This document shows positions 34,463 to 63,487 of a stretch of 64,000 nt of DNA, piece by piece. The stretch lies in sequence record MH383160.1. The stretch is one strand, 5' to 3'. The position numbers were made by a program, and so were the translations under genes. The notes below the pieces were generated by a model, which worked only from the letters and a program-made list of their open reading frames with translations, ran no database searches and was not told the DNA's origin. The first letter of the stretch is position 1. The number at the start of each line of letters is the position of its first letter.

Positions 34463-34960
34463 TTAAGTCACTGCATTATACTTCTCTATAGCATTAGTAA
34501 TATTTAATATAGCTTCAGGAACCATTTCTTTATTGTATTCACGTTTTAAATTTTCCATTTTCTTAATAATTTCCAAGAAAAATGGCAAAATACATGAAGT
34601 ATCTGTAAAATTACATGAGTACAAAGTACTCATTTGAAATAATTCACCTGAATCAATATTAAGAGTATTGTATTCCTTAACAATGTTTTCGTTTGAATTG
34701 AAAATGTGAAATACTGTTCCCATGTGATGAAGATATACACCATTCTCATTTTGAATATTGCATGGTGTGATTACAATAGCAGTGTTGTCAATATTATTTA
34801 CTATTGATAAACGCAGACTATGTAAACCAAAAATAACAGTGCAATCACTTGAACTGCTTTGAATTTGGTCAGCAGTTTGTGTAACACTTGTAATATTTTC
34901 TCCATCAAGACAACTCTTGATTTTATCAAATGAATTTTTCATTGATTTAGTTAGATACAT
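34463..34960 (-). CDS. FQ-module family protein
   Basis: SGELFQMSTLY. Confidence 0.8.
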   Translation of the reverse strand: MYLTKSMKNSFDKIKSCLDGENITSVTQTADQIQSSSSDCTVIFGLHSLRLSIVNNIDNTAIVITPCNIQNENGVYLHHMGTVFHIFNSNENIVKEYNTLNIDSGELFQMSTLYSCNFTDTSCILPFFLEIIKKMENLKREYNKEMVPEAILNITNAIEKYNAVT

Positions 34961-35364
34961 TTATGAACACCTTCGAAATATTTGATTAATGATTTTATCA
35001 TATCGCTACTAATGCCATGTAAGTCAACACCTAAACACTCGTATTGAAAAAAATCAATATCCTCCAGCGTGTTTAGATCAATTTCCACCTTATCATGACC
35101 CAACGAATTCATAATAACGTTTTTATCATTAATTGTCAAGAAAGTTTTATTACTTGAACCTAAAAAGATTTTAACATGTTTATTTGGCATTGCATCATAA
35201 GACAACGATTGTGAACCATAAATGTATGTACCTTCCATCGAACCAGTATCTATAAAGTATAGACGAATCCCTTTATGGTATTTTGACTCCTTAGTGATCG
35301 CCTCTATTAGTTCATCTGTGGTTGTTAACCTTGTTTCTTTCTTCTCTAAATTGCTCAAATGCAT
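34951..35364 (-). CDS. FQ-module family protein
   Basis: EDIDFFQYECL. Confidence 0.7.
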   Translation of the reverse strand: MHLSNLEKKETRLTTTDELIEAITKESKYHKGIRLYFIDTGSMEGTYIYGSQSLSYDAMPNKHVKIFLGSSNKTFLTINDKNVIMNSLGHDKVEIDLNTLEDIDFFQYECLGVDLHGISSDMIKSLIKYFEGVHKCI

Positions 35365-35785
35365 AAAATAATACCTTGATCATTTGTAATGTTTCCGACA
35401 TTACATCAGCAGAAAATTGAACATCAGTGTATTTTACCATAGTACTTTGAGTAAAGAAAGTAGCTTCAATATCTTCAAGGTCAAATGGCTCATCAAATAA
35501 ATTAGTACTGAACATATCAGTTTTTTTCTTATAAGTCAACATAAACTTAGCACTGTATCTCAATACAATTTCATCTTTACTTACTAAAATTCGTGCAATG
35601 TTCTGTCTACCCAGTGTTGTAATGTTAACATTAAACGTATTCTTTCGTGCCTCAACAATATCAACGAAATAACCATCACCTTGGTAAACGTTATGACGAA
35701 CTTCTAATCCTTGTTGAACTGTATTGAACAGTGCGTCCTGGATAAAATAATTTGCAGTATCGATGTTTCCTAAAATATCTAACAT
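35312..35785 (-). CDS. FQ-module family protein (degenerate)
   Basis: EATFFTQSTMV. Confidence 0.7.
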   Translation of the reverse strand: MLDILGNIDTANYFIQDALFNTVQQGLEVRHNVYQGDGYFVDIVEARKNTFNVNITTLGRQNIARILVSKDEIVLRYSAKFMLTYKKKTDMFSTNLFDEPFDLEDIEATFFTQSTMVKYTDVQFSADVMSETLQMIKVLFYAFEQFREERNKVNNHR

Positions 35786-36315
35786 AACTTCTCCTTTATA
35801 GCTGTCATATTTAGAAGAAATTCAGTAAGCAATTCCTCCGTAACATGCTCTGTATACCAGAATATCACAATATCTTTTGAAAGTCGTGTATTCATAAAAA
35901 TATCTACTAACTCTTTGTAGTACTCTAGCGTTTCGAGATTTGTGAGAATTAACGAGTACTGAAAGAGTAATTCTTCCGTTAGATTAAATTCTGGATAAAG
36001 TAAATCATTGAACTCATGTGATGCAGTTTGAACTTTAATTTCTTTGAAGTTATTGGTTATACAACCGGAATAAATATTTCGGTGCAACTCTCTGTACAAC
36101 GCAGCATAATCTATGAATTTTGCTTTAGGGTTAAAATCAAGAACACTTTCACCTTTATATGACAATCGGTGGAACGCCGAGAACATAGTCACTTCCCACG
36201 GTTGCTTAATATCTAGCTCAGTAATATCAATATTATTGGACAGAAGAACCGTAAAAATCTCACCAATCTTTAATAGTAACTTAGTACGTGCTAGTACTGT
36301 CATAGGTTCAATCAT
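35779..36315 (-). CDS. FQ-module family protein
   Basis: TEELLFQYSLIL. Confidence 0.8.
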   Translation of the reverse strand: MIEPMTVLARTKLLLKIGEIFTVLLSNNIDITELDIKQPWEVTMFSAFHRLSYKGESVLDFNPKAKFIDYAALYRELHRNIYSGCITNNFKEIKVQTASHEFNDLLYPEFNLTEELLFQYSLILTNLETLEYYKELVDIFMNTRLSKDIVIFWYTEHVTEELLTEFLLNMTAIKEKLC

Positions 36316-36728
36316 TATACACCTTCATATTCATCAAGGAAATCTTCGATGATCATTTCAGCTTCATCCATATGCATCGCATCAACTTCAATAATACGAA
36401 TTTTAGATGTATCCCAAATCATAAAGCTAGGAACATTGTCTGGCTCGTAATCATTTTTGTACTGAACAGCATCATAACCTTGAGCCGTGCAATTCTCAAT
36501 AAGTGAACGCCACTCATCATCACTGCCTAAATCTTCACACAGAAGCACGTTATCAACATCAACTTCTAAGGTATGCAAGTATACTGTACATGCGTCAACA
36601 ACGTTTAGTGGGCTTCTCAGCTTGCGTAAGGCAGCTTCCAAAGCACTGTGTTTACCTCCCATATGAAGTCCACCATACGGGATATAAAAGTTATCAATTT
36701 TTACAGTACTCGCATGATACAGTTTCAT
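36315..36728 (-). CDS. ADP-ribosyltransferase-fold-like protein
   Basis: LYHAS, GLHMG, LY and GYDAVQYKNDYE pattern seen in ART-like phage domains. Confidence 0.55.
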   Translation of the reverse strand: MKLYHASTVKIDNFYIPYGGLHMGGKHSALEAALRKLRSPLNVVDACTVYLHTLEVDVDNVLLCEDLGSDDEWRSLIENCTAQGYDAVQYKNDYEPDNVPSFMIWDTSKIRIIEVDAMHMDEAEMIIEDFLDEYEGV

Positions 36729-36737
36729 ATTTCATTC

Positions 36738-37322
36738 CTATTTCAGTACTTTAGTCAATGCTTTCACAGCGGTTTCGAGTTGAGCATAGTCGTTAATTGT
36801 AAGGTAATGAATACCATGTGCATTCATTTCAGCATCTATTTTACTATATAAATCAAACATGTCAAGGATATGATTGTATGCATATGAAGTATTTGAAACA
36901 CACAATTCTTGGAACAAACGTTCTTCCAAGTCATTCACAACTTCACCATGAATGTCAAGTACTACACCATCTTTGTAAGTATAGTATTCTTCACTCCACT
37001 CTTCAGAAAGTCGGAACAGTAACGGATTCCCGCCGAACACTTCCATGTCATAGGAATTTATCTCACTAAGTAGTGTTTCACCTGGTTCTGGTGTGAAGTC
37101 GAAATATGCGAGTGTTGAACCATCATAGTCCTTGAGTGATATACCAGTATGATTTAAGCTTACTTCACCATAATTATTATTCTTGAACTTAATTTTGATA
37201 TTAATCTCAATGTATTTTATTGTCTCATCATCACTGAAATTGTAATCAATTTTATACTTTTCCCAAAGAAGTTTGATATCTTTGAAGTACTTTAATTTAC
37301 TTTCAATTTCTTTAAAGTCCAT
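36738..37322 (-). CDS. FQ-module family protein
   Basis: LEERLFQELCV. Confidence 0.8.
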   Translation of the reverse strand: MDFKEIESKLKYFKDIKLLWEKYKIDYNFSDDETIKYIEINIKIKFKNNNYGEVSLNHTGISLKDYDGSTLAYFDFTPEPGETLLSEINSYDMEVFGGNPLLFRLSEEWSEEYYTYKDGVVLDIHGEVVNDLEERLFQELCVSNTSYAYNHILDMFDLYSKIDAEMNAHGIHYLTINDYAQLETAVKALTKVLK

Positions 37323-37914
37323 CTGGAACCACCATTTCTTGAATGTGCTTACATTTTATATTTCCCATATTAGTATGCAATATAAGGGTGTGATTACGCA
37401 ATGATTTTACTTTATAGCACTCATTGAGTACTGAAATAATTCCCCATAACTCTTCTACACTAATAGTGATAGGTTCACTTGTACTCAGTTGCATTAGTGC
37501 TGCTTCAACATCATCTTTGTTATTAATAGTGAACTGAATTCCTCTTTTGAGAATTTTAGTTTTTGGATTGTATTCAGCTAATACATCACCTTCTGGATAA
37601 CCCTCATGAAGTAATAATGTTGTTTCAAAATCACCGCAGTTGAAGTTAATTTCATCATAATCAGGTACACAAATGTTTCCTTCCCCGTACTCATTAGGTT
37701 CAGATTCTAGTGTTAAAATACGCTGAGTCTCATTGCTCAGGATGATAGAATCATTCCAGTACTGGGTAGTGAATGCTCTACGTTTCTTTTGAAAGCACAT
37801 ACTCGACATTGACCCATACTTCTTGTATATGGACTTCTTGAACTCAATAGCAGCAGGAGCCACCTTGATAACTTCACGAATTAAGTCAATAGCTTCTTGA
37901 TAACTTTTTCTCAT
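37312..37914 (-). CDS. FQ-module family protein
   Basis: VEAALMQLSTSEP. Confidence 0.75.
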   Translation of the reverse strand: MRKSYQEAIDLIREVIKVAPAAIEFKKSIYKKYGSMSSMCFQKKRRAFTTQYWNDSIILSNETQRILTLESEPNEYGEGNICVPDYDEINFNCGDFETTLLLHEGYPEGDVLAEYNPKTKILKRGIQFTINNKDDVEAALMQLSTSEPITISVEELWGIISVLNECYKVKSLRNHTLILHTNMGNIKCKHIQEMVVPDGL

Positions 37915-38462
37915 TTATCGTATCCATATAAAATATGATCTAGTGTACTTTGGACTTCTTCATGAAAGAATGAAGGGTAAACTTGTATTAATTTATCTTT
38001 AAGTTCAAGGGAATGGCATAGTTCTAATGTTTTGTAACAATCCTCGTACTGTGCCAGTACATGCAATGTACTTAACTGAAAATGTTGTTCTTCGGAGTAC
38101 AATAAATCATAAACCATATTATCGGATAAAAGATTAGATTTGATTGAAGGATCAAGTACTGTCTGATGGTGACCAACCCAAAAGATAGCTTTGGAGTTAA
38201 TGTTATTACAACCCCATCCTTTCCCCATCTTTTGGTGAATAGCAAATACACAGGAATCATACAAATTAATGTTCAGACGTTCTTCGTCTGCATGGATAGT
38301 TACACCATCAATAGATAGTGTATATTTGAAATCCATAGCCCCCTCACTTCGTGCACGGGAACTAAAGACGAGATATCGATGAATTATGGTATTGATTTTA
38401 TCTGCCCATCCTTCAACACATTTGGATGCACATAATGTAAAAAGATCATGATTGTAGTTCAT
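37911..38462 (-). CDS. FQ-module family protein
   Basis: SEEQHFQLSTLH. Confidence 0.8.
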   Translation of the reverse strand: MNYNHDLFTLCASKCVEGWADKINTIIHRYLVFSSRARSEGAMDFKYTLSIDGVTIHADEERLNINLYDSCVFAIHQKMGKGWGCNNINSKAIFWVGHHQTVLDPSIKSNLLSDNMVYDLLYSEEQHFQLSTLHVLAQYEDCYKTLELCHSLELKDKLIQVYPSFFHEEVQSTLDHILYGYDK

Positions 38463-38480
38463 AAAATTCTCCTTGAGAAC

Positions 38481-38516
38481 AATGTATCATACAAAAAAAC
38501 CAGAGTCAACCCCTGG
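38481..38516 (-). promoter_or_regulatory. nested terminator and promoter
   Basis: TTGACT-N17-TACATT with the -35 inside the CCAG/CTGG-T7 terminator hairpin. Confidence 0.7.
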
Positions 38517-38523
38517 TACAAAT

Positions 38524-39105
38524 TTAATCCATCATAAGTGGGATGATTGCCCATATCTTTTTCATAATCATATCTTCAGTAAAAACAAATGTTTTAGGAG
38601 CAGTATATGATATTGACACACCAAATGGAAGTTTGATTGCATCATCAATTATATTATGAATATCAAACCATGTTTTAACATAATCATATGGTGGAAGTTC
38701 ATGAATTGTACTTAACTGAAAGTAATGTTCTTCACCAAAATCATTATATTCAATTTCACAAATTTTAGTGAATTGTTGATTCCATTTAGATATAATACTA
38801 TTTTTATTATTGTACATAGTAGTTCTATGCATAAAACCATTTTTGCTAGTATGATTTGATATTATGTTTTCTTCAATGTCAGTATCTATTTTAAAATTCA
38901 TATCAAAGTTGTAGTACGGACTCGAAGATTCTTTGAATTTTAAATGTAAATTGCGATTGTTATTAATTTCAATTTCAATACAAAACACATCTGAATCAAA
39001 ACGATTAAACTTGTAATCGTTATCTTCCGGTAGATTCTGTATTTTTTTCATAATACTAAGCATAGGGTGTACTACACTTTTAATAAAATCATTTGTTATT
39101 TTCAT
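38524..39105 (-). CDS. FQ-module family protein
   Basis: GEEHYFQLSTIHE. Confidence 0.8.
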   Translation of the reverse strand: MKITNDFIKSVVHPMLSIMKKIQNLPEDNDYKFNRFDSDVFCIEIEINNNRNLHLKFKESSSPYYNFDMNFKIDTDIEENIISNHTSKNGFMHRTTMYNNKNSIISKWNQQFTKICEIEYNDFGEEHYFQLSTIHELPPYDYVKTWFDIHNIIDDAIKLPFGVSISYTAPKTFVFTEDMIMKKIWAIIPLMMD

Positions 39106-39598
39106 AGTATTCCTTTAGAACTTTATATGATTCAACAATACTATCTTGTGTATAATTTGAACTATATACAACAGCACTTGTTTTAGTTGACCATAGATAT
39201 GACATAAAGGTTATAACACTACTACATGGACTTAATGTATTGTTTTGAAATTCAATTTCTTCAATGTTATCAGTACTGGTATAGATGAATTGGAAAGTAT
39301 CTCGTTTCTGATTCGATACCGAAACTAAAGTGCAATCAGTATAAGGGTTGTATATAAATGTCTCATTACTAATTGAACTATCATTAGTATATGAAGGTTT
39401 GGGAATATAAATCAAACGCATGATATCACGTTCAAGACCTGACTTATTACTTTCCACCAAAGAAATCATATCTATAATTGTCATATGTTCAACACTGACA
39501 TGGAACTTTTTGTTTAGAATTACATCTTTTGGAGAATTTTTATATGAAGACAAAATCTCATACATCTCAACCAATTCGCGTGCATTTAATAAACTCAT
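39089..39598 (-). CDS. FQ-module family protein
   Basis: IEEIEFQNNTL. Confidence 0.75.
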   Translation of the reverse strand: MSLLNARELVEMYEILSSYKNSPKDVILNKKFHVSVEHMTIIDMISLVESNKSGLERDIMRLIYIPKPSYTNDSSISNETFIYNPYTDCTLVSVSNQKRDTFQFIYTSTDNIEEIEFQNNTLSPCSSVITFMSYLWSTKTSAVVYSSNYTQDSIVESYKVLKEYYENNK

Positions 39599-40023
39599 AT
39601 TTTGTCTCTTAATGAAAGAATATCCTTAGTATAAACTGAAACAGAAATATGATTATATTTCATCATTAATTTATACACATAAGAAGCTAGTACTAAATCG
39701 TAAATTAATTTAGTATTATATAGTACTTGGTATTGTAACGCAAGTGAATCAATATCATCTTTACTTTCAATATCCAGAAATGTACCAAAAATTGTAGTAC
39801 CGTAGAGATGAAAAGTGGAATTAATGCAATCAATGCATTCATTGTCCAACAGAGTAGATGATGATGCCCTCGGTGAATCCCAAATAGTCACTGCGTGTAT
39901 GCCCTCAACGAACAAATCTATCCATATTTTGTGTCGTTGTCTTTTTTTTGTTTTATAATTTTCTGGATTTGAAAGTGTAGTTTCAATTATATCCCATATG
40001 TACAAACAATCATCTCTTGTCAT
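39595..40023 (-). CDS. FQ-module family protein
   Basis: DSLALQYQVLYN. Confidence 0.7.
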   Translation of the reverse strand: MTRDDCLYIWDIIETTLSNPENYKTKKRQRHKIWIDLFVEGIHAVTIWDSPRASSSTLLDNECIDCINSTFHLYGTTIFGTFLDIESKDDIDSLALQYQVLYNTKLIYDLVLASYVYKLMMKYNHISVSVYTKDILSLRDKI

Positions 40024-40601
40024 TATAGCACCTTATCCATTGCTGCATTTAATGCTTTTAAACGATCTACATTCAAATTATTGAAGATGTATGTTCCTAA
40101 CATGTGGAAATCGAACTGGTACTTTTTGTATTCATGATAAATTAAACTACAAAAAATAACAGTACTAAGAACCTCTTCAGGTATAACAGTGCTCATCTGG
40201 AACAGTTCTTCTTCAACTGTACTTGATTCTGGATTGATAGATTTTAACACATACTCTTCATCACCGAATAGTACTTTAATATTATATAAAACACCAATAG
40301 TACTAATATGGAATGGGTGGTGTGAAAAACTTCCATCATCCTTAATTTGTATATCGGTTCTAATCTCACACTCTTGATTACTTTTATTTTTATTTTTTAC
40401 AATACAAATATTTCTAGCCCCAGAAATAGTAAGAATACCGTGATCGTAATATTCATTGGACCAACATTTAGATGAAATTGCTACATCACGGATGAGGTAT
40501 TGTTTTTCAATTTCTTTCGCACTACTAACAATTGATAACATTTTTGTACTGATATCATATAATAACTGATGGCGTTCTGTCATATAACTATAAGCGTTCA
40601 T
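40023..40601 (-). CDS. FQ-module family protein
   Basis: VEEELFQMSTVIP. Confidence 0.8.
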   Translation of the reverse strand: MNAYSYMTERHQLLYDISTKMLSIVSSAKEIEKQYLIRDVAISSKCWSNEYYDHGILTISGARNICIVKNKNKSNQECEIRTDIQIKDDGSFSHHPFHISTIGVLYNIKVLFGDEEYVLKSINPESSTVEEELFQMSTVIPEEVLSTVIFCSLIYHEYKKYQFDFHMLGTYIFNNLNVDRLKALNAAMDKVL

Positions 40602-41172
40602 ATTTTTCCTTAACCGATTCTATATTTTGAAGTAGTGTATTCAGAACATCAGTCTTGTAATTGATAAAATCATTGTACATAACTAGTTCACCACAATCAA
40701 GAACTTTTGCAGTATCGTAACAAAGCATTAAGTACTCGAATTCTTTGTAATTGTCCAACAATGATTTCTGGAAAATGAATGCATCTCGAATATCTTCACT
40801 TTGGTCTAATTCTGGTGGAACATCCAACCCAATAAAACCATCATCTTCACTGAAATCAGATTCTACAATTTTATTCATTTTTTCATGTAATGCATTCGCA
40901 AATACCATATTAGAAGAAATAGAACCAATACGTTCACGATTTCTGGATGTGCGAATGTACATAGTAATCGTATCCCATGAACTTTTAATTTTTTTAGAAA
41001 ATTCATAAGTTTTATATACATCCAACTGAACTGATCCAAAACGATGTTTGGATTTGTTTTCAATTTTCAGTCGATAATCATCAAATTCAACAATTTCTGT
41101 AATGTCATGAATCTCTGAAAGTTCTGCAATGTCATGCATGAGTCTCAAAATTTTAGTTCTGATATGGTTCAT
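40588..41172 (-). CDS. FQ-module family protein
   Basis: DAFIFQKSLLD. Confidence 0.8.
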   Translation of the reverse strand: MNHIRTKILRLMHDIAELSEIHDITEIVEFDDYRLKIENKSKHRFGSVQLDVYKTYEFSKKIKSSWDTITMYIRTSRNRERIGSISSNMVFANALHEKMNKIVESDFSEDDGFIGLDVPPELDQSEDIRDAFIFQKSLLDNYKEFEYLMLCYDTAKVLDCGELVMYNDFINYKTDVLNTLLQNIESVKEKYERL

Positions 41173-41735
41173 TGTGCATCCTCGAATTTAACAGGTACAT
41201 GTTCATTAATGAAATTCTTAAGAGCCTGTACTAAATCCTCTAATTCTTTTGTACTGTATTTTAAAATAGTTTTAAAGTGAATCAAATCTTTTCTTTCCAT
41301 GATCTTTGGAATTTTATATGCTAACTCTAAACAGCGTACAGTACTGGCATCATACAAAAGGTTTGCGTTGAACATTAGCACATTGTATTCATCAGATGAA
41401 ATTTTATAATTATATGTATCAATCACTTCATGTGTGTATAAATTCTTATACACAATTTTATTCTCACTGAAGTTTGAGCAAACACACAGATAATCGTTGT
41501 AAAATGAAGAACGATAATCTTGTTTACGTTGTACATCTGCTATGATTTGTAATACTGTATATTTTTCTTCAGAATCCAACTCAATGTTAGCATAACTGCT
41601 CGCAGTTTCAGATACAAGGATATTGATGTTATATTTCTCATTAACTTTAATGTACTGGCGTGAACCAGTATCAGGAATGAACTTAAAACAATGCTTCAGA
41701 AGTAAGGTAACTTCTTTAATTAATTCAGTACTCAT
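41169..41735 (-). CDS. FQ-module family protein
   Basis: VLMFNANLLYD. Confidence 0.7.
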   Translation of the reverse strand: MSTELIKEVTLLLKHCFKFIPDTGSRQYIKVNEKYNINILVSETASSYANIELDSEEKYTVLQIIADVQRKQDYRSSFYNDYLCVCSNFSENKIVYKNLYTHEVIDTYNYKISSDEYNVLMFNANLLYDASTVRCLELAYKIPKIMERKDLIHFKTILKYSTKELEDLVQALKNFINEHVPVKFEDAQ

Positions 41736-41762: not shown

Positions 41763-41791
41763 ATTATAACACATCTAAATGCTACTGTAAA
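41763..41791 (-). promoter_or_regulatory. sigma70-type promoter
   Basis: TTTACA-N17-TATAAT with TG extension. Confidence 0.75.
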
Positions 41792-41802
41792 GACATAAAC
41801 AC

Positions 41803-41826
41803 AAAAAGACCCATAAGGGTCTTTAT
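41803..41826 (-). terminator. Rho-independent terminator
   Basis: AAAGACCC/GGGTCTTT stem plus T run. Confidence 0.75.
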
Positions 41827-42389
41827 TTTGGTAAAACACTGTCAATGTACGCTAGAGCTTCATCTCCGAGGTACGTTCCATCTATTGTTATGTAATAGTT
41901 CATGGGAATATCACACCCAACCTTCTCATAAATTTTCATACATGATATCACATCTTCATCACAAATGGTACTCAATTGAAAAAGTACTTCATCAGTTAAA
42001 GGTACGATATCATGTTTAGATATAGGATTGGTATTTTCATTTAAAACAATATCAAACAAGTTGGGAGTATTCTTTGACGAAATGTAACGATGCTTACTAC
42101 GAATTACCATTCTCGATAGTGAAATACTGGAACTCCATCTTGGATCAACATCTTCATATGATAACGATATTAACATCTCGTGAAAATCTTGGAATTTCAT
42201 TGATGCATAATATGTTTTTTCCTCACCGTACATTCCAAATGATTTGAATTCAATGTCACCTATATTGTGTGTATCACTGGCACTATTCACGAAATTTAAC
42301 AGACTATTGATTAGTCTGATTAGAATATCATCTTTATCCATTCTTAAATAACTCCAAGTGCATGTCGTATAAATCTCTGAAGTCTTCAT
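41823..42389 (-). CDS. FQ-module family protein
   Basis: TDEVLFQLSTICD. Confidence 0.8.
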   Translation of the reverse strand: MKTSEIYTTCTWSYLRMDKDDILIRLINSLLNFVNSASDTHNIGDIEFKSFGMYGEEKTYYASMKFQDFHEMLISLSYEDVDPRWSSSISLSRMVIRSKHRYISSKNTPNLFDIVLNENTNPISKHDIVPLTDEVLFQLSTICDEDVISCMKIYEKVGCDIPMNYYITIDGTYLGDEALAYIDSVLPK

Positions 42390-46885: not shown

Positions 46886-46890
46886 TTGTT

Positions 46891-51825: not shown

Positions 51826-51826
51826 T

Positions 51827-52318: not shown

Positions 52319-52327
52319 TTTATAATC

Positions 52328-53417: not shown

Positions 53418-53468
53418 CTTAATCTCTACTATAATTAATAAGGTAAACTCCAATATAAGGAGCACGTT

Positions 53469-55816: not shown

Positions 55817-55817
55817 A

Positions 55818-56441
55818 CTATATATCCAACCCTTTTACAACATCTACGAAATGTTCAAACACTTCTTTTGAAAAATAACCACCTTCACAAAAAAGCATAC
55901 TAAACGGTGGCAGCATGTCCGATAACTCTTTAGCTAAATTGATTTCTGCTCTTAACTCTTGAACATCAATGATATCATGTACTAAAGATAATTGAAACAT
56001 GAATGCATCTACATCTTCATTCATTTCTGAATTGTAATATAACTCTTCAGGGAATTTGTCGGTTTCGTAATAATAAAAAACTTTATTGTTGAACACACCA
56101 CTAATAGGAACATCATTTTCATCTTTCTTTGAAATGTTTGTTTCCCATGACTCTATATTATTAGGAACAAAAAAATCATAGGCTGACTTTGAACCCTGTA
56201 CTGAATCCAACTTTATTCCATAATATTCCGTATCCATGTATTTCTGCTGTAATGTAATACCACGTGTACTGACATTCACTTGGAATATATCATCTTTATC
56301 TGGAACACTAAATGGAATACATAACACTGAATTCTCAGGGTATTTGGCAATGAATGCATCCAGCACTTTATTAAGCACTGGAATGGCAATTTTACTGTAC
56401 TGCATCAAATCATACATTTTAATTCTGGTCATATCATTCAC
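55818..56441 (-). CDS. FQ-module family protein
   Basis: DAFMFQLSLVHD. Confidence 0.8.
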   Translation of the reverse strand: MNDMTRIKMYDLMQYSKIAIPVLNKVLDAFIAKYPENSVLCIPFSVPDKDDIFQVNVSTRGITLQQKYMDTEYYGIKLDSVQGSKSAYDFFVPNNIESWETNISKKDENDVPISGVFNNKVFYYYETDKFPEELYYNSEMNEDVDAFMFQLSLVHDIIDVQELRAEINLAKELSDMLPPFSMLFCEGGYFSKEVFEHFVDVVKGLDI

Positions 56442-56973
56442 CTGTGTATGTTTTCACCCTTAGCGATTCAAAATCCCATACATCACTGATTGTACCATTG
56501 TGCCTGTAATCATAATATTCTACTAATACATTATACAATAACTTCAACGATACAAATTCATGATTCCACGGAGCTTTATTGTCATGAACACATTTGGTGA
56601 TATAAGGTATAATATATAAACTAAACAACACTAATGGTGAATGTATACATTGCATTTGAAAATATTCTTCTTCTTGCATACAATGTTCAGGAATAATTAG
56701 ATCATAATGTGTCTCAAATAAATGTAAACCTATTGTGGTTTTTTTCGTATCACATGCGTACCATATTGTACTATCCGAAATAAATGGAATGATACCATTA
56801 TTGTTTGCAATGTACATCATATGGTAAGAGCGATTTGTCTTGTTAAATATCTCGATACTTTCGATATTACTACAAATCATGTATTCAAGGCAATCAATGA
56901 TCTTATCTTTAAATGTACCAATTTCATTGAATGACATTGCTTTCTGTACTTTTGATACTGTTGTACTGCTCAT
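56434..56973 (-). CDS. FQ-module family protein
   Basis: QEEEYFQMQCIHS. Confidence 0.8.
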   Translation of the reverse strand: MSSTTVSKVQKAMSFNEIGTFKDKIIDCLEYMICSNIESIEIFNKTNRSYHMMYIANNNGIIPFISDSTIWYACDTKKTTIGLHLFETHYDLIIPEHCMQEEEYFQMQCIHSPLVLFSLYIIPYITKCVHDNKAPWNHEFVSLKLLYNVLVEYYDYRHNGTISDVWDFESLRVKTYTGE

Positions 56974-57512
56974 ATGTTCTCCTTAAAAAAATCCAAATAC
57001 TCTTCATTGAAAGCATATGTATCATCTTTTTTGTTATGCACCACATAATCATAAAGAGCTATGAATGCAGGGATTATGATCTTACATGATTTATTATTGT
57101 ATTTGTACTGCTCCAAATCAACGGTGTTCAATTTAGCAATAAGCATAGCAGCAAAGATATCTTCATGGCGGTGTACTGTGCTGTACTGAAAATACTCATC
57201 CTCTCCAATATCGGGATGATATAACGGTATAACCAAATTATTACGAATTGACATTTTATATTTTTGTAATGCAGCTAAATGCATGAACCACAATCTATCT
57301 TCATGGAAAGATGGAAAAATAATTTTGTCTGTGCTAATAAAAATTTCTTCATTTCGATTATTTGTCACAAGAGGTGCATACATTTTAATTTTTGCAGATT
57401 TAATAATTAAATTAAAAATATAATGAATCTTATGAACTGCACTTGATGCATCTTCGTATGTACTTGGGATTATGAAACTCACTATATGTTCTCCTTTAAA
57501 ATGAATACACAT
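56970..57512 (-). CDS. FQ-module family protein
   Basis: GEDEYFQYSTVH. Confidence 0.8.
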   Translation of the reverse strand: MCIHFKGEHIVSFIIPSTYEDASSAVHKIHYIFNLIIKSAKIKMYAPLVTNNRNEEIFISTDKIIFPSFHEDRLWFMHLAALQKYKMSIRNNLVIPLYHPDIGEDEYFQYSTVHRHEDIFAAMLIAKLNTVDLEQYKYNNKSCKIIIPAFIALYDYVVHNKKDDTYAFNEEYLDFFKENI

Positions 57513-57564
57513 GATAACAGCTTTGGTCTTCTATGTCAATACCAAAACGAAAAAAGCCCATATC

Positions 57565-58071
57565 TTACGATACAGGCGTTATGGGCATGTTGATTTGAAT
57601 TTCATTGTACAAATCATCAATATATAGACATGAAAAAAATACACTATCTTGTACTATATTGTTGTGATAAAGCATTTTAAATACTACATAAAAAAATAAA
57701 TCAATATCATCGTGGACTAAATTCTGCTGGAACCACCACTCGTCTGTTAAATCTTGTGCATTAAAATCATCAGGAACTTCAATGAACGACATATCACAAT
57801 CTTCTTTGTACTCAAACCACATGTCGTCATTCGGATAACGTTCATGCTTCTCTGGGTAACAATTGCTGGGATTAAATGTTAAAATATTAAACCCCGTAGA
57901 GCAACGTTCTTTATTTAAAAATGTATTATTCCATACCTGATATTTTTCACCAACATCAAGCTCTTCTGTTACTGATTTTATTGCACATAATGTACTGTAT
58001 ATTGTTTCTATCTTGTGAACATATTTAAATGCAGCATCTAAGCTGAACTCTAAATCATACATGTACTGCAT
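57565..58071 (-). CDS. FQ-module family protein
   Basis: TDEWWFQQNLVHD. Confidence 0.8.
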   Translation of the reverse strand: MQYMYDLEFSLDAAFKYVHKIETIYSTLCAIKSVTEELDVGEKYQVWNNTFLNKERCSTGFNILTFNPSNCYPEKHERYPNDDMWFEYKEDCDMSFIEVPDDFNAQDLTDEWWFQQNLVHDDIDLFFYVVFKMLYHNNIVQDSVFFSCLYIDDLYNEIQINMPITPVS

Positions 58072-58391
58072 AAAATTACCTCAACTAAAGCAAGGACTGT
58101 ATTGAATTCCACTATACTTGTAATTCCTTGAAGGTACATGTACTTTGCTACTACATATTTCTGTACTAAATTATAATTATTAAATTCCTCAAAATTGTAA
58201 TTTAGAACATAATCTGTACTCAAAAATATCTTATGCATCTCTAATGCACTTTGATAATACGCGTACAACTCACGGATATCAATACTGGTTAAATTATATT
58301 GTTCATATCTATGATACGGGATGGCTTCAATTTCAATACTATAAAACCATTCTCTTAACTTATTAATATCAAATGTATTATTCAGCTTCAT
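58050..58391 (-). CDS. hypothetical protein
   Basis: 113 aa; NFEEFNNYNLV weakly FQ-like. Confidence 0.65.
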   Translation of the reverse strand: MKLNNTFDINKLREWFYSIEIEAIPYHRYEQYNLTSIDIRELYAYYQSALEMHKIFLSTDYVLNYNFEEFNNYNLVQKYVVAKYMYLQGITSIVEFNTVLALVEVILCSTCMI

Positions 58392-58944
58392 AACTCAATA
58401 CCTCCATTAAACACTCATACACACCGTCAATCGCATAAGCACAAAAATTGAAATTAATTTTGTGATTCTTGTGTAATGGACTATTGTGTACTGTACTCAT
58501 TATGACATTATAAAATAACAAACGCACTGGTACAAGCATTGAACCTTGGAAAAATTCTTCCTCTGATTTATATGTATTGTACTCTATTGCGTTGTTCGTT
58601 TCTTTATCATATGTTACCATTACTAACGGGGCATTTTTATTATACCATGCGTACTCTAAATCATTCTTTCCAATAACAGAACCAGGTGCGAAATCCAAAA
58701 GACCAATAACACTACGGGCATTTGGTATATCTGGTGTATTGAATCGTTTATCAAAATGACTCGTGCACGCAATATATGTATTGTACTTCGATGGAATAAT
58801 ACCAATACATTTGTGGAAATGACGCTTGTGATATTTCTGGGCATTATATAAGGCTGCAACAATACAAGCTAACTTTTGTCCCATAAGGATGGCATTAGCG
58901 TAGGTGTACTGAATTTCATTGCTGGTATGGTACTTCGAGGTCAT
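58378..58944 (-). CDS. FQ-module family protein
   Basis: SEEEFFQGSMLVP. Confidence 0.8.
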   Translation of the reverse strand: MTSKYHTSNEIQYTYANAILMGQKLACIVAALYNAQKYHKRHFHKCIGIIPSKYNTYIACTSHFDKRFNTPDIPNARSVIGLLDFAPGSVIGKNDLEYAWYNKNAPLVMVTYDKETNNAIEYNTYKSEEEFFQGSMLVPVRLLFYNVIMSTVHNSPLHKNHKINFNFCAYAIDGVYECLMEVLSYEAE

Positions 58945-59227
58945 AATATTTCCTTTGCCATATCATGGGCTTAAAATCAATAACAGCTTTCTGTATCTTT
59001 TTTAATAATAAGACATCATAACCACCCGTGTCAATCACTAATTGCTGTTGGAACAATTCTTCATCGGATAATGTATTGAAATCTACAAAATAATCTGTAA
59101 CTATCGAATCATTTAAATGTGCCATGTACCAACCTGAACTTCTTGAATAAATCAAATTCCACCCATCGTCATCATCTTCTAATTCAACATAAATCATATC
59201 TGGGGTATACATCATTTTATACTTCAT
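58916..59227 (-). CDS. FQ-module family protein (short type)
   Basis: SDEELFQQQLVID. Confidence 0.8.
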   Translation of the reverse strand: MKYKMMYTPDMIYVELEDDDDGWNLIYSRSSGWYMAHLNDSIVTDYFVDFNTLSDEELFQQQLVIDTGGYDVLLLKKIQKAVIDFKPMIWQRKYYDLEVPYQQ

Positions 59228-59765
59228 AACTATATCCTTGCATTAATAAATCATAAACTACATGGACTAAATTTAATTGAATATAAAATTTTAAACCTTT
59301 AATTAATGAATTCAAATGCATTGTACTGAATAACATTAGATACATCATCTCATGCGGTTTTGTGATTAATGATTTTTGAAATACTTCAGCTTCATCATAA
59401 GGGTCTATGAACTGAAATTTGTCTTCATCATAATTTGTATTGGAATGCTGATATATAAAATAATCATCATTGGTATTGTACCACAAATATCCTTCGAATC
59501 CTGTACTAACATCTTTGGTCAATGGGGATGCTGATACTGGATTTGAACTGATTAATGCACCTACATCAACAATCCCCGTTGTATCATATTCGATTTCAAC
59601 ATCAATATCAATGTATTTCCTTGCGATATCTGCGTTTATGGACAAATATAAACTACCACCTGTCCTCTGACTCAGGATTCCATCTATCTGCGATATAGGA
59701 TGGTTGTTATTGAGGATAAGCATTATTGTACTTATCTTGTGTGCTAATAACTCTATCTCATTCAT
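59217..59765 (-). CDS. FQ-module family protein
   Basis: DEAEVFQKSLIT. Confidence 0.8.
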   Translation of the reverse strand: MNEIELLAHKISTIMLILNNNHPISQIDGILSQRTGGSLYLSINADIARKYIDIDVEIEYDTTGIVDVGALISSNPVSASPLTKDVSTGFEGYLWYNTNDDYFIYQHSNTNYDEDKFQFIDPYDEAEVFQKSLITKPHEMMYLMLFSTMHLNSLIKGLKFYIQLNLVHVVYDLLMQGYSYEV

Positions 59766-59965
59766 AATTTACCTATCGATGGATACCTAGGATTTGTAGG
59801 ATGTAAAATCCTGTCCTGTACTGAAAGGTGCTCAAATGTAATTAAACTCAAATAATAATCGTAATTATCAATACCACCCTTCAAATGTATATTGTAATAC
59901 ATCTTAATACTATCTAATAATGAATCCTGTAATGCATTTAATGTTATCGTATTAATCTTTTGCAT
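59762..59965 (-). CDS. small hypothetical protein
   Basis: 67 aa, overlapping start/stop context. Confidence 0.55.
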   Translation of the reverse strand: MQKINTITLNALQDSLLDSIKMYYNIHLKGGIDNYDYYLSLITFEHLSVQDRILHPTNPRYPSIGKL

Positions 59966-60171
59966 TAATGTTCTTCTCTTAAAAATCGTTTGATAGCATA
60001 ATCTAAATAAAATTCATAACACATGCTATCTCTGTTCTTTATCCATATTTTGTAATCGGATTTTATATTACTCAACAAATAATTTGTATTAATTGTGTAA
60101 TAATCCAAACGACCTAATCGTGCCATTTGATAGGATACTCCGTTCCATTTATTGTATAAGATATAATCCAT
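59965..60171 (-). CDS. small hypothetical protein
   Basis: true start likely MARLG. Confidence 0.5.
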   Translation of the reverse strand: MDYILYNKWNGVSYQMARLGRLDYYTINTNYLLSNIKSDYKIWIKNRDSMCYEFYLDYAIKRFLREEH

Positions 60172-60524
60172 CCGTAATGAATAGGACTATTCTTTTCTCC
60201 TTTAGGAATAAAATATAAAGATGTACTGGGGTTATAACTGAATAAATCGTTGTTACCAAATGTAAAATGCGATAACTCAATTTTCCTTGTACCTGTACTT
60301 GGACGAAGAGCATTCTTAACACCGAAGACTGTACCTTGATATTTCTCGGAAAATTCAAACAATACATCTGTAATTAAATCACGAAACTCCGCATGTATGG
60401 TTTCAAAAAAATCTATATTACACGATGTTTTAATATCCTTGAACTCATTATAAAAAGCATGTCTTGTATTCAAAAGAAATATTACTTTTTTAAGATCCTG
60501 AACTATTTCTGGATTCATATTCAT
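60114..60524 (-). CDS. helix+barrel family-like protein
   Basis: FSEKYQGTVF. Confidence 0.7.
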   Translation of the reverse strand: MNMNPEIVQDLKKVIFLLNTRHAFYNEFKDIKTSCNIDFFETIHAEFRDLITDVLFEFSEKYQGTVFGVKNALRPSTGTRKIELSHFTFGNNDLFSYNPSTSLYFIPKGEKNSPIHYGWIISYTINGTEYPIKWHD

Positions 60525-60756
60525 TTATCTCATTCTGTAACTTAAGCATCAAAATTTGCATATTAATTTTTTGTAAAAGGTGCTTGATAAATTTCTGTGC
60601 CATTTCTTCTTGTTCTTTTGTACCAAGATAAAATAACAGATTAAATTCTGATAATCGCAAAGAAAAATCTTCATCACCACCCTTTAAACAAAAATCCCTG
60701 TACTTTGTAGCGTACAAATATTGGTTTACCTTTTTATAATACCCTGTGTTTTGCAT
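60490..60756 (-). CDS. LGTxxQE family mini-protein
   Basis: LLFYLGTKEQEEMAQKFIKHL. Confidence 0.75.
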   Translation of the reverse strand: MQNTGYYKKVNQYLYATKYRDFCLKGGDEDFSLRLSEFNLLFYLGTKEQEEMAQKFIKHLLQKINMQILMLKLQNEINEYESRNSSGS

Positions 60757-60944
60757 ACTATCTCCGTTCGCAACGAATTTATATAATAATGAACAAATTG
60801 TTCTTGTGAACGTGTTCCAAGAAAAATAAACATATCAAACTCTGTTGTTTTTAAATTCAATGCATCTTTTGTAAAATTCCTGTTGAATTCCCTGTACTTT
60901 TGGGTCTTCCATTCTTGATTAATTGTCTTGTATATCGATTTCAA
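60726..60944 (-). CDS. LGTxxQE family mini-protein
   Basis: FIFLGTRSQEQFVHYYINSL. Confidence 0.75.
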   Translation of the reverse strand: MKSIYKTINQEWKTQKYREFNRNFTKDALNLKTTEFDMFIFLGTRSQEQFVHYYINSLRTEIVCKTQGIIKR

Positions 60945-61239
60945 TGATTCTCCCTGACATACCTTGTATTAGCTTATCATACATATCGAGCATCACTTTT
61001 TGAATATTAATTAGTACTGGCATCGTGCAAATATCAATGTCGTATACTAAGCTGTACTGGAATAATTCATCTTCCTGCATTTGTACTAAATTAGGTAAAA
61101 GATAATTGTCTGCCTCTTCATCCTGGTACTTGAAATGCATAACACCATCCTTTTTGTACAAAAGAATGTCAATATCACCTAACTCTTCTGCATAACCAAA
61201 AATACATATACTCGATGTTTTTGCTATATTAAATTTCAT
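60919..61239 (-). CDS. FQ-module family protein (short type)
   Basis: QEDELFQYSLVYD. Confidence 0.8.
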   Translation of the reverse strand: MKFNIAKTSSICIFGYAEELGDIDILLYKKDGVMHFKYQDEEADNYLLPNLVQMQEDELFQYSLVYDIDICTMPVLINIQKVMLDMYDKLIQGMSGRIIEIDIQDN

Positions 61240-62081: not shown

Positions 62082-62110
62082 ATGTTAACACTATTCAAAT
62101 GGAGTGTCAA
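62082..62110 (-). promoter_or_regulatory. sigma70-type promoter
   Basis: TTGACA-N17-TAACAT with TG extension. Confidence 0.7.
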
Positions 62111-62153: not shown

Positions 62154-62486
62154 TTATATATTGAATTCACATACGTGTTGAACAAAATTCTTTGGAAGAT
62201 GACAATGTGCAATCATCTGCTGTTGCACTTTCTTCATATCTTCTAATGTAAAACCTAAAGAATCATCGTGTACTAACATGTACTGAAACTCTTCTTCTTC
62301 AGAGATAGAACATAAATTCGGTACTGAAATTGTTTTTGTTTTTCTTGCACCTAATTTCCAATGAAAAGAATTATTGCATTTTCTGTACTCAAATATCTTC
62401 AACCCAGCACCTCTATTAAAATCAGCTACTACAATGTAACATGAATTCTTACGTACAATACAATTAAATTTACGCATTATCTCCAC
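62154..62486 (-). CDS. FQ-module family protein (short type)
   Basis: SEEEEFQYMLVHD. Confidence 0.8.
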   Translation of the reverse strand: MEIMRKFNCIVRKNSCYIVVADFNRGAGLKIFEYRKCNNSFHWKLGARKTKTISVPNLCSISEEEEFQYMLVHDDSLGFTLEDMKKVQQQMIAHCHLPKNFVQHVCEFNI

Positions 62487-62722
62487 CTCTCTCCGTCATC
62501 GCAAGAGTACTGGTACGTTGTCGTTAGGGTAGGGACCATGTTGGTAATGGGCATATTATTAACAATAACCGTAACAGGCATAAGAATCGTCTCTACTCTA
62601 CTCTGTCCTGTCCTTGTGCAATTCATCTTTTGCATTTCATCTGAATCCATGAAATACAATACAAATGGTGCAATCCCAAGAACAATACACAAGACGATAA
62701 GGAAATTTAAAAAATTTAACAT
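62477..62722 (-). CDS. membrane-anchored small protein
   Basis: N-terminal TM helix, C..TG...YQYSC. Confidence 0.7.
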   Translation of the reverse strand: MLNFLNFLIVLCIVLGIAPFVLYFMDSDEMQKMNCTRTGQSRVETILMPVTVIVNNMPITNMVPTLTTTYQYSCDDGERWR

Positions 62723-62751
62723 AATTTTTACCCTATGATTAACGTTAGTGT

Positions 62752-62780
62752 ACTATATCAGTAATGAAAAGTACTGTCAA
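62752..62780 (-). promoter_or_regulatory. sigma70-type promoter with GTAC sites adjoining both boxes
   Basis: TTGACA-N17-TATAGT; GTAC abuts the -35 and overlaps the -10. Confidence 0.75.
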
Positions 62781-62781
62781 G

Positions 62782-63177
62782 CTAGTACTGCACTGTTCTA
62801 ATGAAAGTACCTTTACTCATGGATTTAAGCTTATGAACCTCTTCCTGCATACCCTTAATTAACCCTAAAGGTATAGGTAAATCATGTACTAAGCTGTACT
62901 GAAAGTATTCTTCTTCAGATAAAGTACTAACATCTGGGACTCCAATTTTAGTTAGATAATCTTGATGTGTTGACCAATAAATTATATCTTCAGTACTATT
63001 GTACTCCCCATATACTGAACAATATTGATGAATATCTTTCCTGTACCCTTGAGCAATAAAGAACTTATCTACTGCATTACCAGCATTAATAGAATTCACT
63101 TCTATTGTCACAGTACTTGAGCTTGTATAACTCTTAATATTATCAGTACTCAATAATGTGTTCTTCATAATCACCAT
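62782..63177 (-). CDS. FQ-module family protein (short type)
   Basis: STLSEEEYFQYSLVHD. Confidence 0.8.
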   Translation of the reverse strand: MVIMKNTLLSTDNIKSYTSSSTVTIEVNSINAGNAVDKFFIAQGYRKDIHQYCSVYGEYNSTEDIIYWSTHQDYLTKIGVPDVSTLSEEEYFQYSLVHDLPIPLGLIKGMQEEVHKLKSMSKGTFIRTVQY

Positions 63178-63487
63178 TAGGCTCCTGTTTAGATTCTTTC
63201 ATTAGTACTATCATCTTATGTACTAATGGCATAGGAAACTCTAAATCCCATACTAATGATTCCTGAAAGTATTCTTCTTCAGATAAAGTACTTAAATCTT
63301 TAATATCAACGTGCTTGTATATTTTATTTTCGTAATTAACAAATGATATATATAAATCACTAACATAAGAATCATAGGTAATTGTGAATGGCTTACCCTT
63401 GTAATCCATTACATCTCTACATAGACTACTTTTGATATATGTATGTTCAAATGATTTATATACCTTGAGTTGTATATTAGTTTTCAT
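63143..63487 (-). CDS. FQ-module family protein (short type)
   Basis: STLSEEEYFQESLVWD. Confidence 0.8.
   Translation of the reverse strand: MKTNIQLKVYKSFEHTYIKSSLCRDVMDYKGKPFTITYDSYVSDLYISFVNYENKIYKHVDIKDLSTLSEEEYFQESLVWDLEFPMPLVHKMIVLMKESKQEPNGDYEEHIIEY

What the first reader, a model, noticed from the sequence alone, without database searches (positions are those of the whole stretch)
34463..63487. About 50-member paralog arsenal with a constant acidic FQ module and hypervariable middles
Seen: about 50 co-oriented ORFs (48 in this 29-kb span plus 2 outliers at 22 kb) carry an (S/T/D)EExx-F-Q-x-S-(L/T)-(V/I/L)-(Y/F/H/W)-D-like motif followed by 30-50 aa of predicted helix, often ending FYLD. 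Many long members also share an N-terminal helix (A...A..I). The sequence between these anchors differs almost completely from gene to gene. There is a long type (140-200 aa) and a short type (100-135 aa, often PDYxxL before the motif). Established: constant-dock/variable-binder architecture is how poxvirus ankyrin-PRANC and F-box adaptors work. Inference: these could be adaptors that bind many host targets (for example defence proteins) and dock on one hub such as a protease, RNA polymerase or a virion-loading site. The window encodes ClpP and HslV-like proteases. Function is unknown; paralog expansions may already be noted in relatives.
Basis: partly seen in the sequence, partly recalled or inferred. 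Interest (0 to 1): 0.9.

Follow-up and report, generated by a model that had tools for sequence, protein, structure and literature searches.

The report
Jumbo-phage multigene family with FQ helix
A giant E. coli phage devotes about a tenth of its genes to one unnamed family of small acidic proteins that share a short 'EE..FQ.S' helix and probably one unmatched fold, look like early non-virion genes, and have no tested function.

Summary
The window is Escherichia phage UB (Asteriusvirus, ~353 kb). On the minus strand, 49 ORFs carry [ST]-E-E-x-[LYF]-F-Q-x-S-[LT]-[VIL]-aromatic-D about 40-75 residues from the C-terminus: 47 in 34463-63487 and 2 at 22 kb. F and Q are each kept in 48 of 49. Shuffled proteins give 0.4 loose-motif matches against 40 observed. 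Parts before the motif are unalignable between paralogs (8 of 1176 pairs).

The 'constant dock, variable binder' reading is not what the models suggest. AlphaFold models of a long and a short member (pLDDT 83 and 88) give one compact alpha/beta domain with the motif in a confident helix. Independent models of paralogs at 16-21% identity superpose full-length (TM 0.5-0.65). No Pfam, PDB or Atlas match exists.

The family is old. Profile matches: 54 in UB, 37 in RaK2, about 20 in Munch-like phages, 8 and 4 in GAP32 and CBB, 0 in PA5oct. The UB and RaK2 arrays are roughly colinear. Orthologs are under purifying selection (dN/dS 0.26-0.42; neighbours 0.09-0.12). Sigma-70 early-type promoters fill the few spacers. 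Array members are absent from two particle proteomes.

Best reading: early, non-virion host-interaction proteins on one conserved scaffold. Function is untested.

The parts
22113..23377 (-). Two outlying family genes: 22799-23377 (192 aa, firm) and 22113-22802 (229 aa, motif SEEEHFQ, weak)
   Evidence: HMM E 7.6e-12 for 22799; E 0.0017 for 22113; motif table
34463..38462 (-). Array block A. Family genes start at 34463, 34951, 35312, 35779, 36738, 37312 and 37911. The gene at 36315-36728 is not a member (phrog_11632).
   Evidence: Members 34951, 35312, 36738 and 37312 rest on the motif only.
38499..38517 (-). Terminator-like hairpin with a T run in the spacer 38463-38523
38524..41735 (-). Array block B. 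Family genes at 38524, 39089, 40023 and 40588. Possible degenerate members at 39595 and 41169 lack FQ.
41763..41824 (-). Terminator hairpin (41824-41805) followed by a sigma-70-like promoter, TTTACA-17-TATAAT with TG (41791-41763)
41823..45594 (-). Array block C. Family genes at 41823, 42334, 43420, 43902, 44299, 44651 and 45118. A possible member at 42894 lacks FQ.
45628..45657 (-). Consensus sigma-70 promoter, TTGACA-18-TATAAT with TG (12 of 12), in the spacer 45595-45653
45654..53420 (-). Array block D. Family genes at 45654, 46198, 46523, 47484, 48399, 48932, 49686, 49997, 50427, 50915, 51355, 51827, 52328, 52684 and 53040 (likely ATG at 53420). A possible member is at 46891. Non-members are at 48034, 48203 and 49378. 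Genes 49997-52318 form a five-gene tandem subfamily.
   Evidence: Models were made of 51827 and 52684.
53528..53582 (.). Run of N inside the spacer between ORF 53615-53824 and member 53040. A GC-rich half hairpin sits on its upstream side.
   Evidence: same record offset on both sides. The letters were not looked up.
54196..57512 (-). Array block E. Family genes at 54196, 54758 (weak), 55099, 55818, 56434 and 56970.
57511..57577 (-). Terminator hairpin (57577-57556) followed by promoter TTGACA-17-TATCAT with TG (57539-57511)
57565..61239 (-). Array block F. Family genes at 57565, 58378, 58916, 59217 and 60919. Non-members are at 58050, 59762, 59965, 60114, 60490 and 60726.
62082..62110 (-). 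Promoter-like TTGACA-17-TAACAT with TG in the spacer 62046-62153
62154..62486 (-). Family gene, short type, 110 aa
   Evidence: HMM E 6.3e-16
62752..62780 (-). Promoter-like TTGACA-17-TATAGT with TG in the spacer 62723-62781
62782..63487 (-). Two short-type family genes, 62782-63177 (131 aa) and 63143-63487 (114 aa)
   Evidence: HMM E 3.4e-14 and 1.5e-13

Best explanation
This is an old lineage-specific expansion of one small acidic cytoplasmic domain in RaK2-like jumbo phages of enterobacteria. Profile matches number 54 in phage UB, at least a tenth of its 515 annotated features.

Every member appears to have the same alpha/beta architecture. A four- to five-stranded antiparallel sheet comes first. 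Then comes a short helix carrying the capping-box-like [ST]-E-E..F-Q.S motif, a longer helix, and a final strand. Long members add one helix at the N-terminus and one at the C-terminus.

The FQ motif is most likely the hallmark of the fold's helical core, which is why it stays fixed. The sheet and its loops have diverged beyond sequence recognition.

The genes sit in several short operons that look like early operons read by host sigma-70 RNA polymerase. Their products are not found in particle proteomes. I therefore infer that they act in the infected cell soon after entry.

The most likely mechanism is a repertoire of single-domain binders or inhibitors. Each paralog would recognise a different host (or competitor or defence) component through its diverged sheet surface.

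Shown: the family, the motif, its distribution, the selection regime, the promoter positions and the absence from proteomes. Predicted only: the shared fold. Inferred: early timing and a binder function.
For: - Family and motif.
- Restricted range: the module profile hit only 84 representatives among 1.84 billion proteins. All are 49-202 aa, with the motif placed near the C-terminus as in the window's members.
- Matches per genome at E<=0.01: UB 54, RaK2 37, Munch 22, fENko-Kae01 19, GAP32 8, CBB 4, PA5oct 0.
- Dense arrays on two metagenomic contigs: 18 of 29 and 19 of 27 ORFs carry the module.
- Fold: the long model has pLDDT 82.6 and pTM 0.79, with the motif in helix 113-119. The short model has pLDDT 87.6 and pTM 0.83, with the motif in helix 66-75.
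- Shared fold: BFVD models of other members at 13-21% identity align full-length at TM 0.5-0.65.
- Age: the RaK2 array is roughly colinear with UB's, and a few pairs are alignable end to end at 22-31% identity.
- Selection: pooled dN/dS is 0.28-0.48 before the motif and 0.20-0.34 for the module. The neighbouring region gives 0.09-0.12.
- Timing: the five best TG-extended sigma-70 matches on the coding strand all fall in spacers that make up 2% of the array. Two of them directly follow terminator hairpins.
- Location: in fENko-Kae01 the array starts right after the terminal repeat.
- Not in particles: phAPEC6 gp412c-gp444c (the block checked) are absent from the 62-protein virion list. None of ENKO_051-074 carries the LC-MS/MS note, although 220 phage proteins were detected.
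- Acidic: median pI 4.96 and median net charge -9.
Against: - No function has been tested for any member, and no homolog has a known role (Pfam none, PHROGs 'unknown function').
- The fold is predicted, not solved. I could not inspect coordinates, so burial of F and Q is inferred from the conservation pattern alone.
- An invariant glutamine is unusual for a purely structural position. It could mark a shared ligand, partner or catalytic site.
- Early timing rests on promoter consensus only. Metatranscriptome contigs were inconclusive.
- Absence from proteomes could reflect small size, low abundance or loss through the 300-kDa filter.
- Colinearity and purifying selection fit housekeeping roles in the phage cycle as well as host interaction.
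Confidence: 0.5

Rival explanations
1. The FQ module is an exposed constant dock that brings each paralog's variable part, with its bound host target, to one hub such as ClpP or another protease, RNA polymerase or a loading site.
For: F-Q is invariant and the flanking acidic residues are conserved across paralogs that share almost nothing else. A ClpP homolog lies in the window at 8862-9557.
Against: The motif lies in a confident helix inside a compact domain, not in a linker or tail. Nearly all positions from -5 to +7 are constrained, which suggests burial. The 'variable' part shares one fold. Virion loading is contradicted by two proteomes. Nothing beyond presence in the genome links ClpP to the family.
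Confidence: 0.12
2. The conserved E-E..Q.S..D residues form a shared small-molecule, metal or catalytic site. The family would then be a set of sponges or tiny enzymes with different specificities.
For: The conserved polar residues E-4, E-3, Q+1, S+3 and D+7 are kept in most members. An invariant Gln is atypical for a core position.
Against: Short members are only about 100-120 aa. There is no match to any known enzyme or sponge family or fold. The S/T-x-x-E and D positions fit helix-capping roles.
Confidence: 0.1
3. The module is a homo- or hetero-oligomerisation interface, so that paralogs assemble with each other into mixed complexes.
For: A surface conserved among many co-expressed paralogs is typical of families that pair with each other. 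The weak structural neighbours are polo boxes, which pair.
Against: No positive evidence. The polo-box similarity (Z 4.0-4.5) is below the noise level stated by the tool.
Confidence: 0.08
4. The motif E-x-x-[YLF]-F-Q followed by x-S is a cleavage site for a 3C/NIa-like protease (compare TEV ExxYxQ|S/G and rhinovirus 3C LEVLFQ|GP) that releases the C-terminal 40-75 residues.
For: Resemblance of the motif to those sites (the sites themselves are from my own knowledge).
Against: The motif is helical and well packed in both models. The conservation reaches seven residues past Q, further than such sites need. No Peptidase_C3 match exists in the UB genome, although the control search was silent too.
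Confidence: 0.02

Closest known systems
Multigene families of large DNA viruses (poxvirus ankyrin/PRANC proteins, ASFV MGF families, the ~35-copy zinc-ribbon expansion of Bacillus phage G noted in PMC7824862)
   Same: There are tens of tandem, co-oriented paralogs in one virus. A conserved element sits beside strongly diverged sequence. A role in host interaction is presumed.
   Different: There are no ankyrin, F-box/PRANC or zinc-ribbon signatures (Pfam none). The protein is a single small domain rather than repeats plus a dock. The host has no SCF ligase. The array is old and colinear between phage genera rather than fast-turning.
Tandem arrays of small acidic immunity or antitoxin-like proteins (SUKH and Imm families of polymorphic toxin systems)
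   Same: The proteins are small, acidic alpha+beta proteins. They sit in tandem arrays of very divergent paralogs. Each presumably neutralises a different partner.
   Different: No sequence match to any Pfam Imm or SMI1_KNR4 model at E<1. The comparison is by analogy only and comes from my own knowledge.
Polo-box domains (Plk1, Plk2, Plk4, Cdc5, KKT3)
   Same: These are the best structural neighbours of the short model. Both have an antiparallel sheet covered by a helix. Seven polo-box entries appear among the top 28 rows.
   Different: Z is only 4.0-4.5 with 68-76 residues aligned and 4-10% identity, below the level the tool calls meaningful. There are no tandem boxes and no phosphopeptide-binding residues to point to.
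T4-type early genes and internal proteins
   Same: The genes are small and tightly packed behind TTGACA / TG-extended -10 promoters. T4 IPI is a precedent for anti-defence proteins in variable loci (my own knowledge).
   Different: The products are not packaged in particles. There is no N-terminal capsid-targeting peptide. They form one homologous family rather than unrelated genes.

Membership tests
PHROGs 9317, 12674, 13866, 15629 and single-gene PHROGs (all 'unknown function') | Significant match to the PHROG profile | tested here: met
   E 1e-56 to 1e-144 to each member's own PHROG. Weak cross-hits between PHROGs occur through the motif region. PHROGs splits the family into many groups.
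Poxvirus-type ankyrin/PRANC or F-box adaptors | Ankyrin or other repeat domain plus a C-terminal F-box-like (PRANC) helix bundle | tested here: not met
   No Pfam match at E<1 in 10 members. The models show one alpha/beta domain, not repeats plus a box.
Poxvirus-type ankyrin/PRANC or F-box adaptors | Docking on a shared cellular hub (Skp1/cullin) | not testable with these tools
   No hub candidate is known. It would need pull-downs.
Polo-box domain | Six-stranded sheet plus helix fold with a clear structural match | tested here: inconclusive
   VIA-align Z 4.0-4.5, rmsd 3.0-4.3, 68-76 aligned. Foldseek found none.
3C/NIa protease substrates | Site in an accessible extended segment | tested here: not met
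   The motif is helical with pLDDT above 90 in both models.
3C/NIa protease substrates | Cognate chymotrypsin-like cysteine protease encoded by the virus | tested here: inconclusive
   PF00548 found nothing in the UB genome, but the control genomes were silent as well.
Bacterial sliding-clamp binding motif (QL[SD]LF / QLxLxL) | Short linear motif in a disordered terminus or linker | tested here: not met
   Q-x-S-L-V-F resembles it in about half the members, and the rest have T at the key Leu position. The segment is folded.
Packaged internal proteins (T4 IP type) | Presence in purified virions | tested here: not met
   phAPEC6 orthologs gp412c-gp444c are absent from Table 1 of PMC7247149. fENko-Kae01 array genes carry no LC-MS/MS note.
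Any solved structure or Pfam family | Sequence or fold match | tested here: not met
   PDB profile searches: best E 0.3 for the long profile and none for the short. Foldseek PDB: best E 1.1 and 0.099. VIA wide: best Z 3.1 and 4.5. Atlas: TM at most 0.34 and 0.50.

The most novel reading that the evidence does not exclude
RaK2-like jumbo phages carry a germline repertoire of about 20-60 single-domain binders built on a fold not yet seen in solved structures. The fixed FQ helix would be either the scaffold's keystone or a shared effector or docking site. The repertoire would be deployed in the first minutes of infection against many host defence or housekeeping targets. That would be a phage counterpart of the multigene host-range families of poxviruses and ASFV.
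Probability: 0.2. Interest if true: 0.85.

Novelty: new variant of a known kind. Interest (0 to 1): 0.6.

Why it matters
At least a tenth of the genes of a whole clade of 350-kb phages, several of them studied as therapy candidates, belong to one family. That family has no name, no Pfam entry, no known fold and no function. PHROGs splits it into many unrelated-looking groups, so it has stayed invisible in genome papers. The RaK2 paper only remarks that about 10% of its gene products are paralogues (PMC3622015).

Defining the family gives three things:
- a single handle (the module profile) for annotating hundreds of 'hypothetical proteins';
- a compact, confidently predicted domain for structural work;
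- a tractable set of early genes to screen for host-takeover or anti-defence activity.

If the members prove to be target-specific binders, the family would also be a natural library of small stable scaffolds.

Tried and rejected
- Homodimer test: complex prediction on the short type, two copies, gave 'no answer' (score 0.00, mark 0.42). It counts neither for nor against binding.
- TEV/3C-like cleavage site: rejected, because the motif is helical and packed and no C3 peptidase was found (weak).
- Clamp-binding motif: rejected for the same structural reason, and because half the members have Thr at the key Leu position.
- Pfam on 18 array proteins: nothing. PHROGs: only 'unknown function'.
- PDB by sequence profile: nothing.
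- Fold searches (Foldseek PDB, VIA wide, Atlas): nothing above noise.
- ESM Atlas feature search of the short member: best score 0.87, unnamed clusters, below the tool's lead threshold.
- Public RNA runs: wastewater metatranscriptome contigs cover parts of 47500-53000 at low depth. DNA carry-over cannot be excluded, so expression is not shown.
- Literature: no description of this family or motif in the RaK2, CBB, phAPEC6, Sharanji, fEgEco12 or fENko-Kae01 papers, or in the jumbo-phage comparative review.
- Positive selection on the variable part: pooled dN/dS stays well below 1. Site-level tests were not run.


Full report
**What the window is.** A 12-kb piece of the span is 100% identical to Escherichia phage UB (MH383160.1, 353 kb). 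UB belongs to the genus Asteriusvirus, species PBECO4. Window position equals record position minus 124000. About 35 related coliphage and Salmonella phage genomes match at 80-99%. Almost every gene in the window is on the minus strand. The first 34 kb encode ClpP, DNA ligase, RNA ligase, polynucleotide kinase, two Ser/Thr phosphatases, a Sir2-like protein and similar enzymes.

**The gap.** The N run at 53528-53582 lies in a spacer. Upstream of it is the stop of ORF 53615-53824. Downstream is the likely ATG at 53420 of family member 53040, whose 125-aa homolog P0032 starts at the equivalent Met.
- Two frames touch the N run. One is an upstream TTG extension of that member. The other is an antisense plus-strand frame.
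- The offset to the deposited record is the same on both sides.
- PBECO4 has the same spacing between the equivalents of 52000 and 54100. phAPEC6 and 121Q have about 540-610 more bases there.
- No family gene is interrupted. I did not look up the masked letters.

An HMM seeded on the strict motif and iterated on the window's own minus-strand ORFs converges on 38 ORFs at E<0.01. Adding ORFs with a clear acidic-x-x-FQ motif at the same distance from the C-terminus gives 49. Of these, 47 lie in 34463-63487 and two lie at 22113-23377. Seven of the 49 rest on the motif alone. Four further ORFs of family size have lost FQ and are only possible members.

The position counts over the 49 are as follows:

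| Position relative to F | Residues |
|---|---|
| -5 | S/T |
| -4 | E/D in 44 |
| -3 | mostly E |
| -1 | L/Y/F |
| 0 | F in 48 |
| +1 | Q in 48 |
| +2 | free |
| +3 | S in 37 |
| +4 | L/T |
| +5 | V/I/L |
| +6 | Y/H/F/W |
| +7 | D in 21 |

A loose regular expression hits 40 of the 67 genes in the span and none of the 73 outside it. Shuffled proteins give 0.39 on average. F-Q sits 40-75 residues from the C-terminus in every member.

BLASTP links only 8 of 1176 pairs for the part before the motif. For the motif plus tail it links 62 pairs and joins 34 members into one cluster. The 'FYLD' ending belongs to one subfamily of about ten genes. That subfamily includes the five tandem genes at 49997-52318.

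**Spread of the family.** The 58-position module profile was searched against 1.84 billion representative proteins. It found 84 at E<=0.001. All are 49-202 residues long, with the motif placed near the C-terminus as in the window's members. A word-indexed search with one member found only Asteriusvirus-type proteins.

Six-frame profile searches of whole phage genomes gave these matches at E<=0.01:

| Phage | Matches |
|---|---|
| UB | 54 |
| Klebsiella phage RaK2 | 37 |
| Salmonella phage Munch | 22 |
| Klebsiella phage fENko-Kae01 | 19 |
| Cronobacter phage GAP32 | 8 |
| Pectobacterium phage CBB | 4 |
| Pseudomonas phage PA5oct | 0 |

- In UB, eight of the weaker matches lie at record positions 268-292 kb, outside the window. 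ORFs there carry FQ, FM or LQ variants of the motif.
- Two metagenomic contigs that encode divergent members are dense arrays too. The module is present in 18 of 29 and 19 of 27 ORFs.
- Pfam has nothing. PHROGs places the members in many separate groups, all of unknown function.
- The papers I could search do not describe the family. The RaK2 paper only says that nearly 10% of its gene products are paralogues.

**Structure.** A long member, 51827-52318 (163 aa), was modelled with 22 aligned sequences (pLDDT 82.6, pTM 0.79). The model has an N-terminal helix, five short strands and a short helix. Next comes helix 113-119, which is the EEYYFQQ motif in a stretch with block-mean pLDDT 91-95. Then come helix 125-139, strand 145-148 (the FYFD ending) and a last helix.

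A short member, 52684-53043 (119 aa), was modelled with 40 sequences (pLDDT 87.6, pTM 0.83). It has five strands, helix 66-75 containing F70-Q71, helix 84-100 and a last strand.

The two types therefore share a core of sheet, FQ helix, long helix and closing strand. Long members add a helix at each end.

Foldseek against BFVD found only other members of this phage lineage: 121Q, SP27, RaK2, GAP32 and Serratia phage BF. Those models were made independently. Matches cover the full length at TM 0.5-0.65 even at 13-21% identity. The part that cannot be aligned by sequence is thus most likely the same sheet in all members.

No solved or Atlas structure matches:
- Foldseek PDB: best E 1.1 and 0.099.
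- VIA wide: best Z 3.1 and 4.5.
- Atlas: TM at most 0.34 and 0.50.

The best rows for the short model are polo boxes at Z 4.0-4.5. The tool itself rates that as common-arrangement level.

**What the motif is.** In both models the motif is a helix, not a linker. S/T at -5 with E at -4 and -3 reads as a helix N-cap with acidic residues at the positive end of the helix dipole. D at +7 sits immediately before the next helix in the long model. Only positions -2 and +2 vary freely. This pattern fits an element packed on most sides.

I could not read the coordinates, so burial is an inference. The strict invariance of Gln remains unexplained. A shared ligand, partner or catalytic role is not excluded.

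**Evolution.** I pooled Nei-Gojobori estimates for orthologs in phAPEC6, 121Q, UE-S1 and Ecwhy_1.

| Region | dN/dS |
|---|---|
| Family, before the motif | 0.28-0.48 |
| Family, motif plus tail | 0.20-0.34 |
| Family, whole genes | 0.26-0.42 |
| Neighbouring region 8.8-18 kb | 0.09-0.12 |
| Enzymes in that region | 0.05-0.07 |

The family is less constrained than its neighbours, but each paralog is kept by purifying selection. The variable part is only modestly more relaxed than the module.

Gene content changes faster in the array than next door. Distant Asteriusvirus relatives cover 36-71% of a 9.4-kb array piece. All but one (phage A4, 45%) cover 85-87% of an equally long enzyme region.

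The RaK2 array (28 module-bearing ORFs in 33 kb) runs roughly colinear with UB's. Some pairs are alignable end to end at 22-31% identity. Most duplications therefore predate the split of these genera.

**Expression and location.** Only nine spacers of 35 nt or more, 615 nt in all, exist between 34 and 64 kb. The five best TG-extended sigma-70 matches on the coding strand lie in those spacers. Their coordinates are 45657-45628 (12 of 12), 41791-41763, 57539-57511, 62780-62752 and 62110-62082. Two of them directly follow terminator hairpins. This is the layout of early operons read by unmodified host polymerase. It is an inference from consensus only.
- In fENko-Kae01 the array begins directly after the 19.7-kb terminal repeat.
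- phAPEC6 orthologs gp412c-gp444c, the block I checked, are absent from the 62-protein virion proteome. That list has no entry between gp347 and gp549.
- None of ENKO_051-074 carries the record's 'identified with LC-MS/MS' note. That study detected 220 phage proteins in a particle-enriched lysate.
- Members are acidic, with median pI 4.96 and median net charge -9.
- Wastewater metatranscriptome contigs cover parts of the array at low depth. They cannot prove transcription.

**Verdict.** The family is real, large, old, unnamed and structurally unmatched. The adaptor-with-constant-dock mechanism is not what the models suggest, and virion loading is contradicted. A shared hub remains untested.

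The best-supported reading is a repertoire of early, non-virion, single-domain proteins on one conserved scaffold. The sheet surface has diverged, most plausibly to bind different host components. I put about 0.5 on that composite statement. Within it, the family and fold parts are far more secure than the function.

Noticed in passing
window 48034-48225, 48203-48421, 60490-60756, 60726-60944, 61236-62045 (N-terminal 60 aa), 63477-63752, 63721-63942: A second, smaller paralog family of 63-91-aa proteins is interleaved with the FQ array. Its members share an 'xLGTxxQE...Y(I/L)xxL' signature. Three of them match phrog_4148 (unknown function).
   Followed up: partly
UB record 268000-293000 (loci L003, L004), outside the window: A second cluster of at least ten 120-180-aa genes carries motif variants such as EMFFQLSTVYD, TEEMYLQLNFVHD and TEESFFMASTIND. 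The family is therefore larger than the window shows, and Q or F can be replaced in this branch.
   Followed up: partly
window 50499-51892: In one public run (X1) a contig joins 50499 to 51892, skipping 1392 bases, at about a third of the local depth. The two ends lie in the paralogs 50427-50915 and 51827-52318. This looks like a deletion by recombination between tandem family genes.
   Followed up: no
window 52000-54100: phAPEC6 and 121Q have about 540-610 more bases than UB and PBECO4 between the equivalents of these points. There is therefore a gene-sized indel near the masked spacer. Only coordinates were compared; no letters at the gap were read.
   Followed up: partly
window 36315-36728: A 137-aa gene embedded in the array is not a family member. 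It matches its own PHROG 11632 (unknown function) and no Pfam family.
   Followed up: partly
window 4974-5597: A 207-aa protein gives a weak, sub-threshold Clp_protease match (E 0.0031, 17.9 bits against a cut-off of 20.2). It lies beside the clear ClpP at 8862-9557.
   Followed up: partly
locus L021 (Klebsiella phage fENko-Kae01, record 19000-33000): The family array starts immediately after the 19.7-kb direct terminal repeat at the left genome end.
   Followed up: no
window 24762-24810, 30577-30903, 32118-32166: Spacers upstream of the array also hold TG-extended -10 elements and terminator hairpins. The whole 20-64 kb stretch therefore looks like one early region.
   Followed up: no
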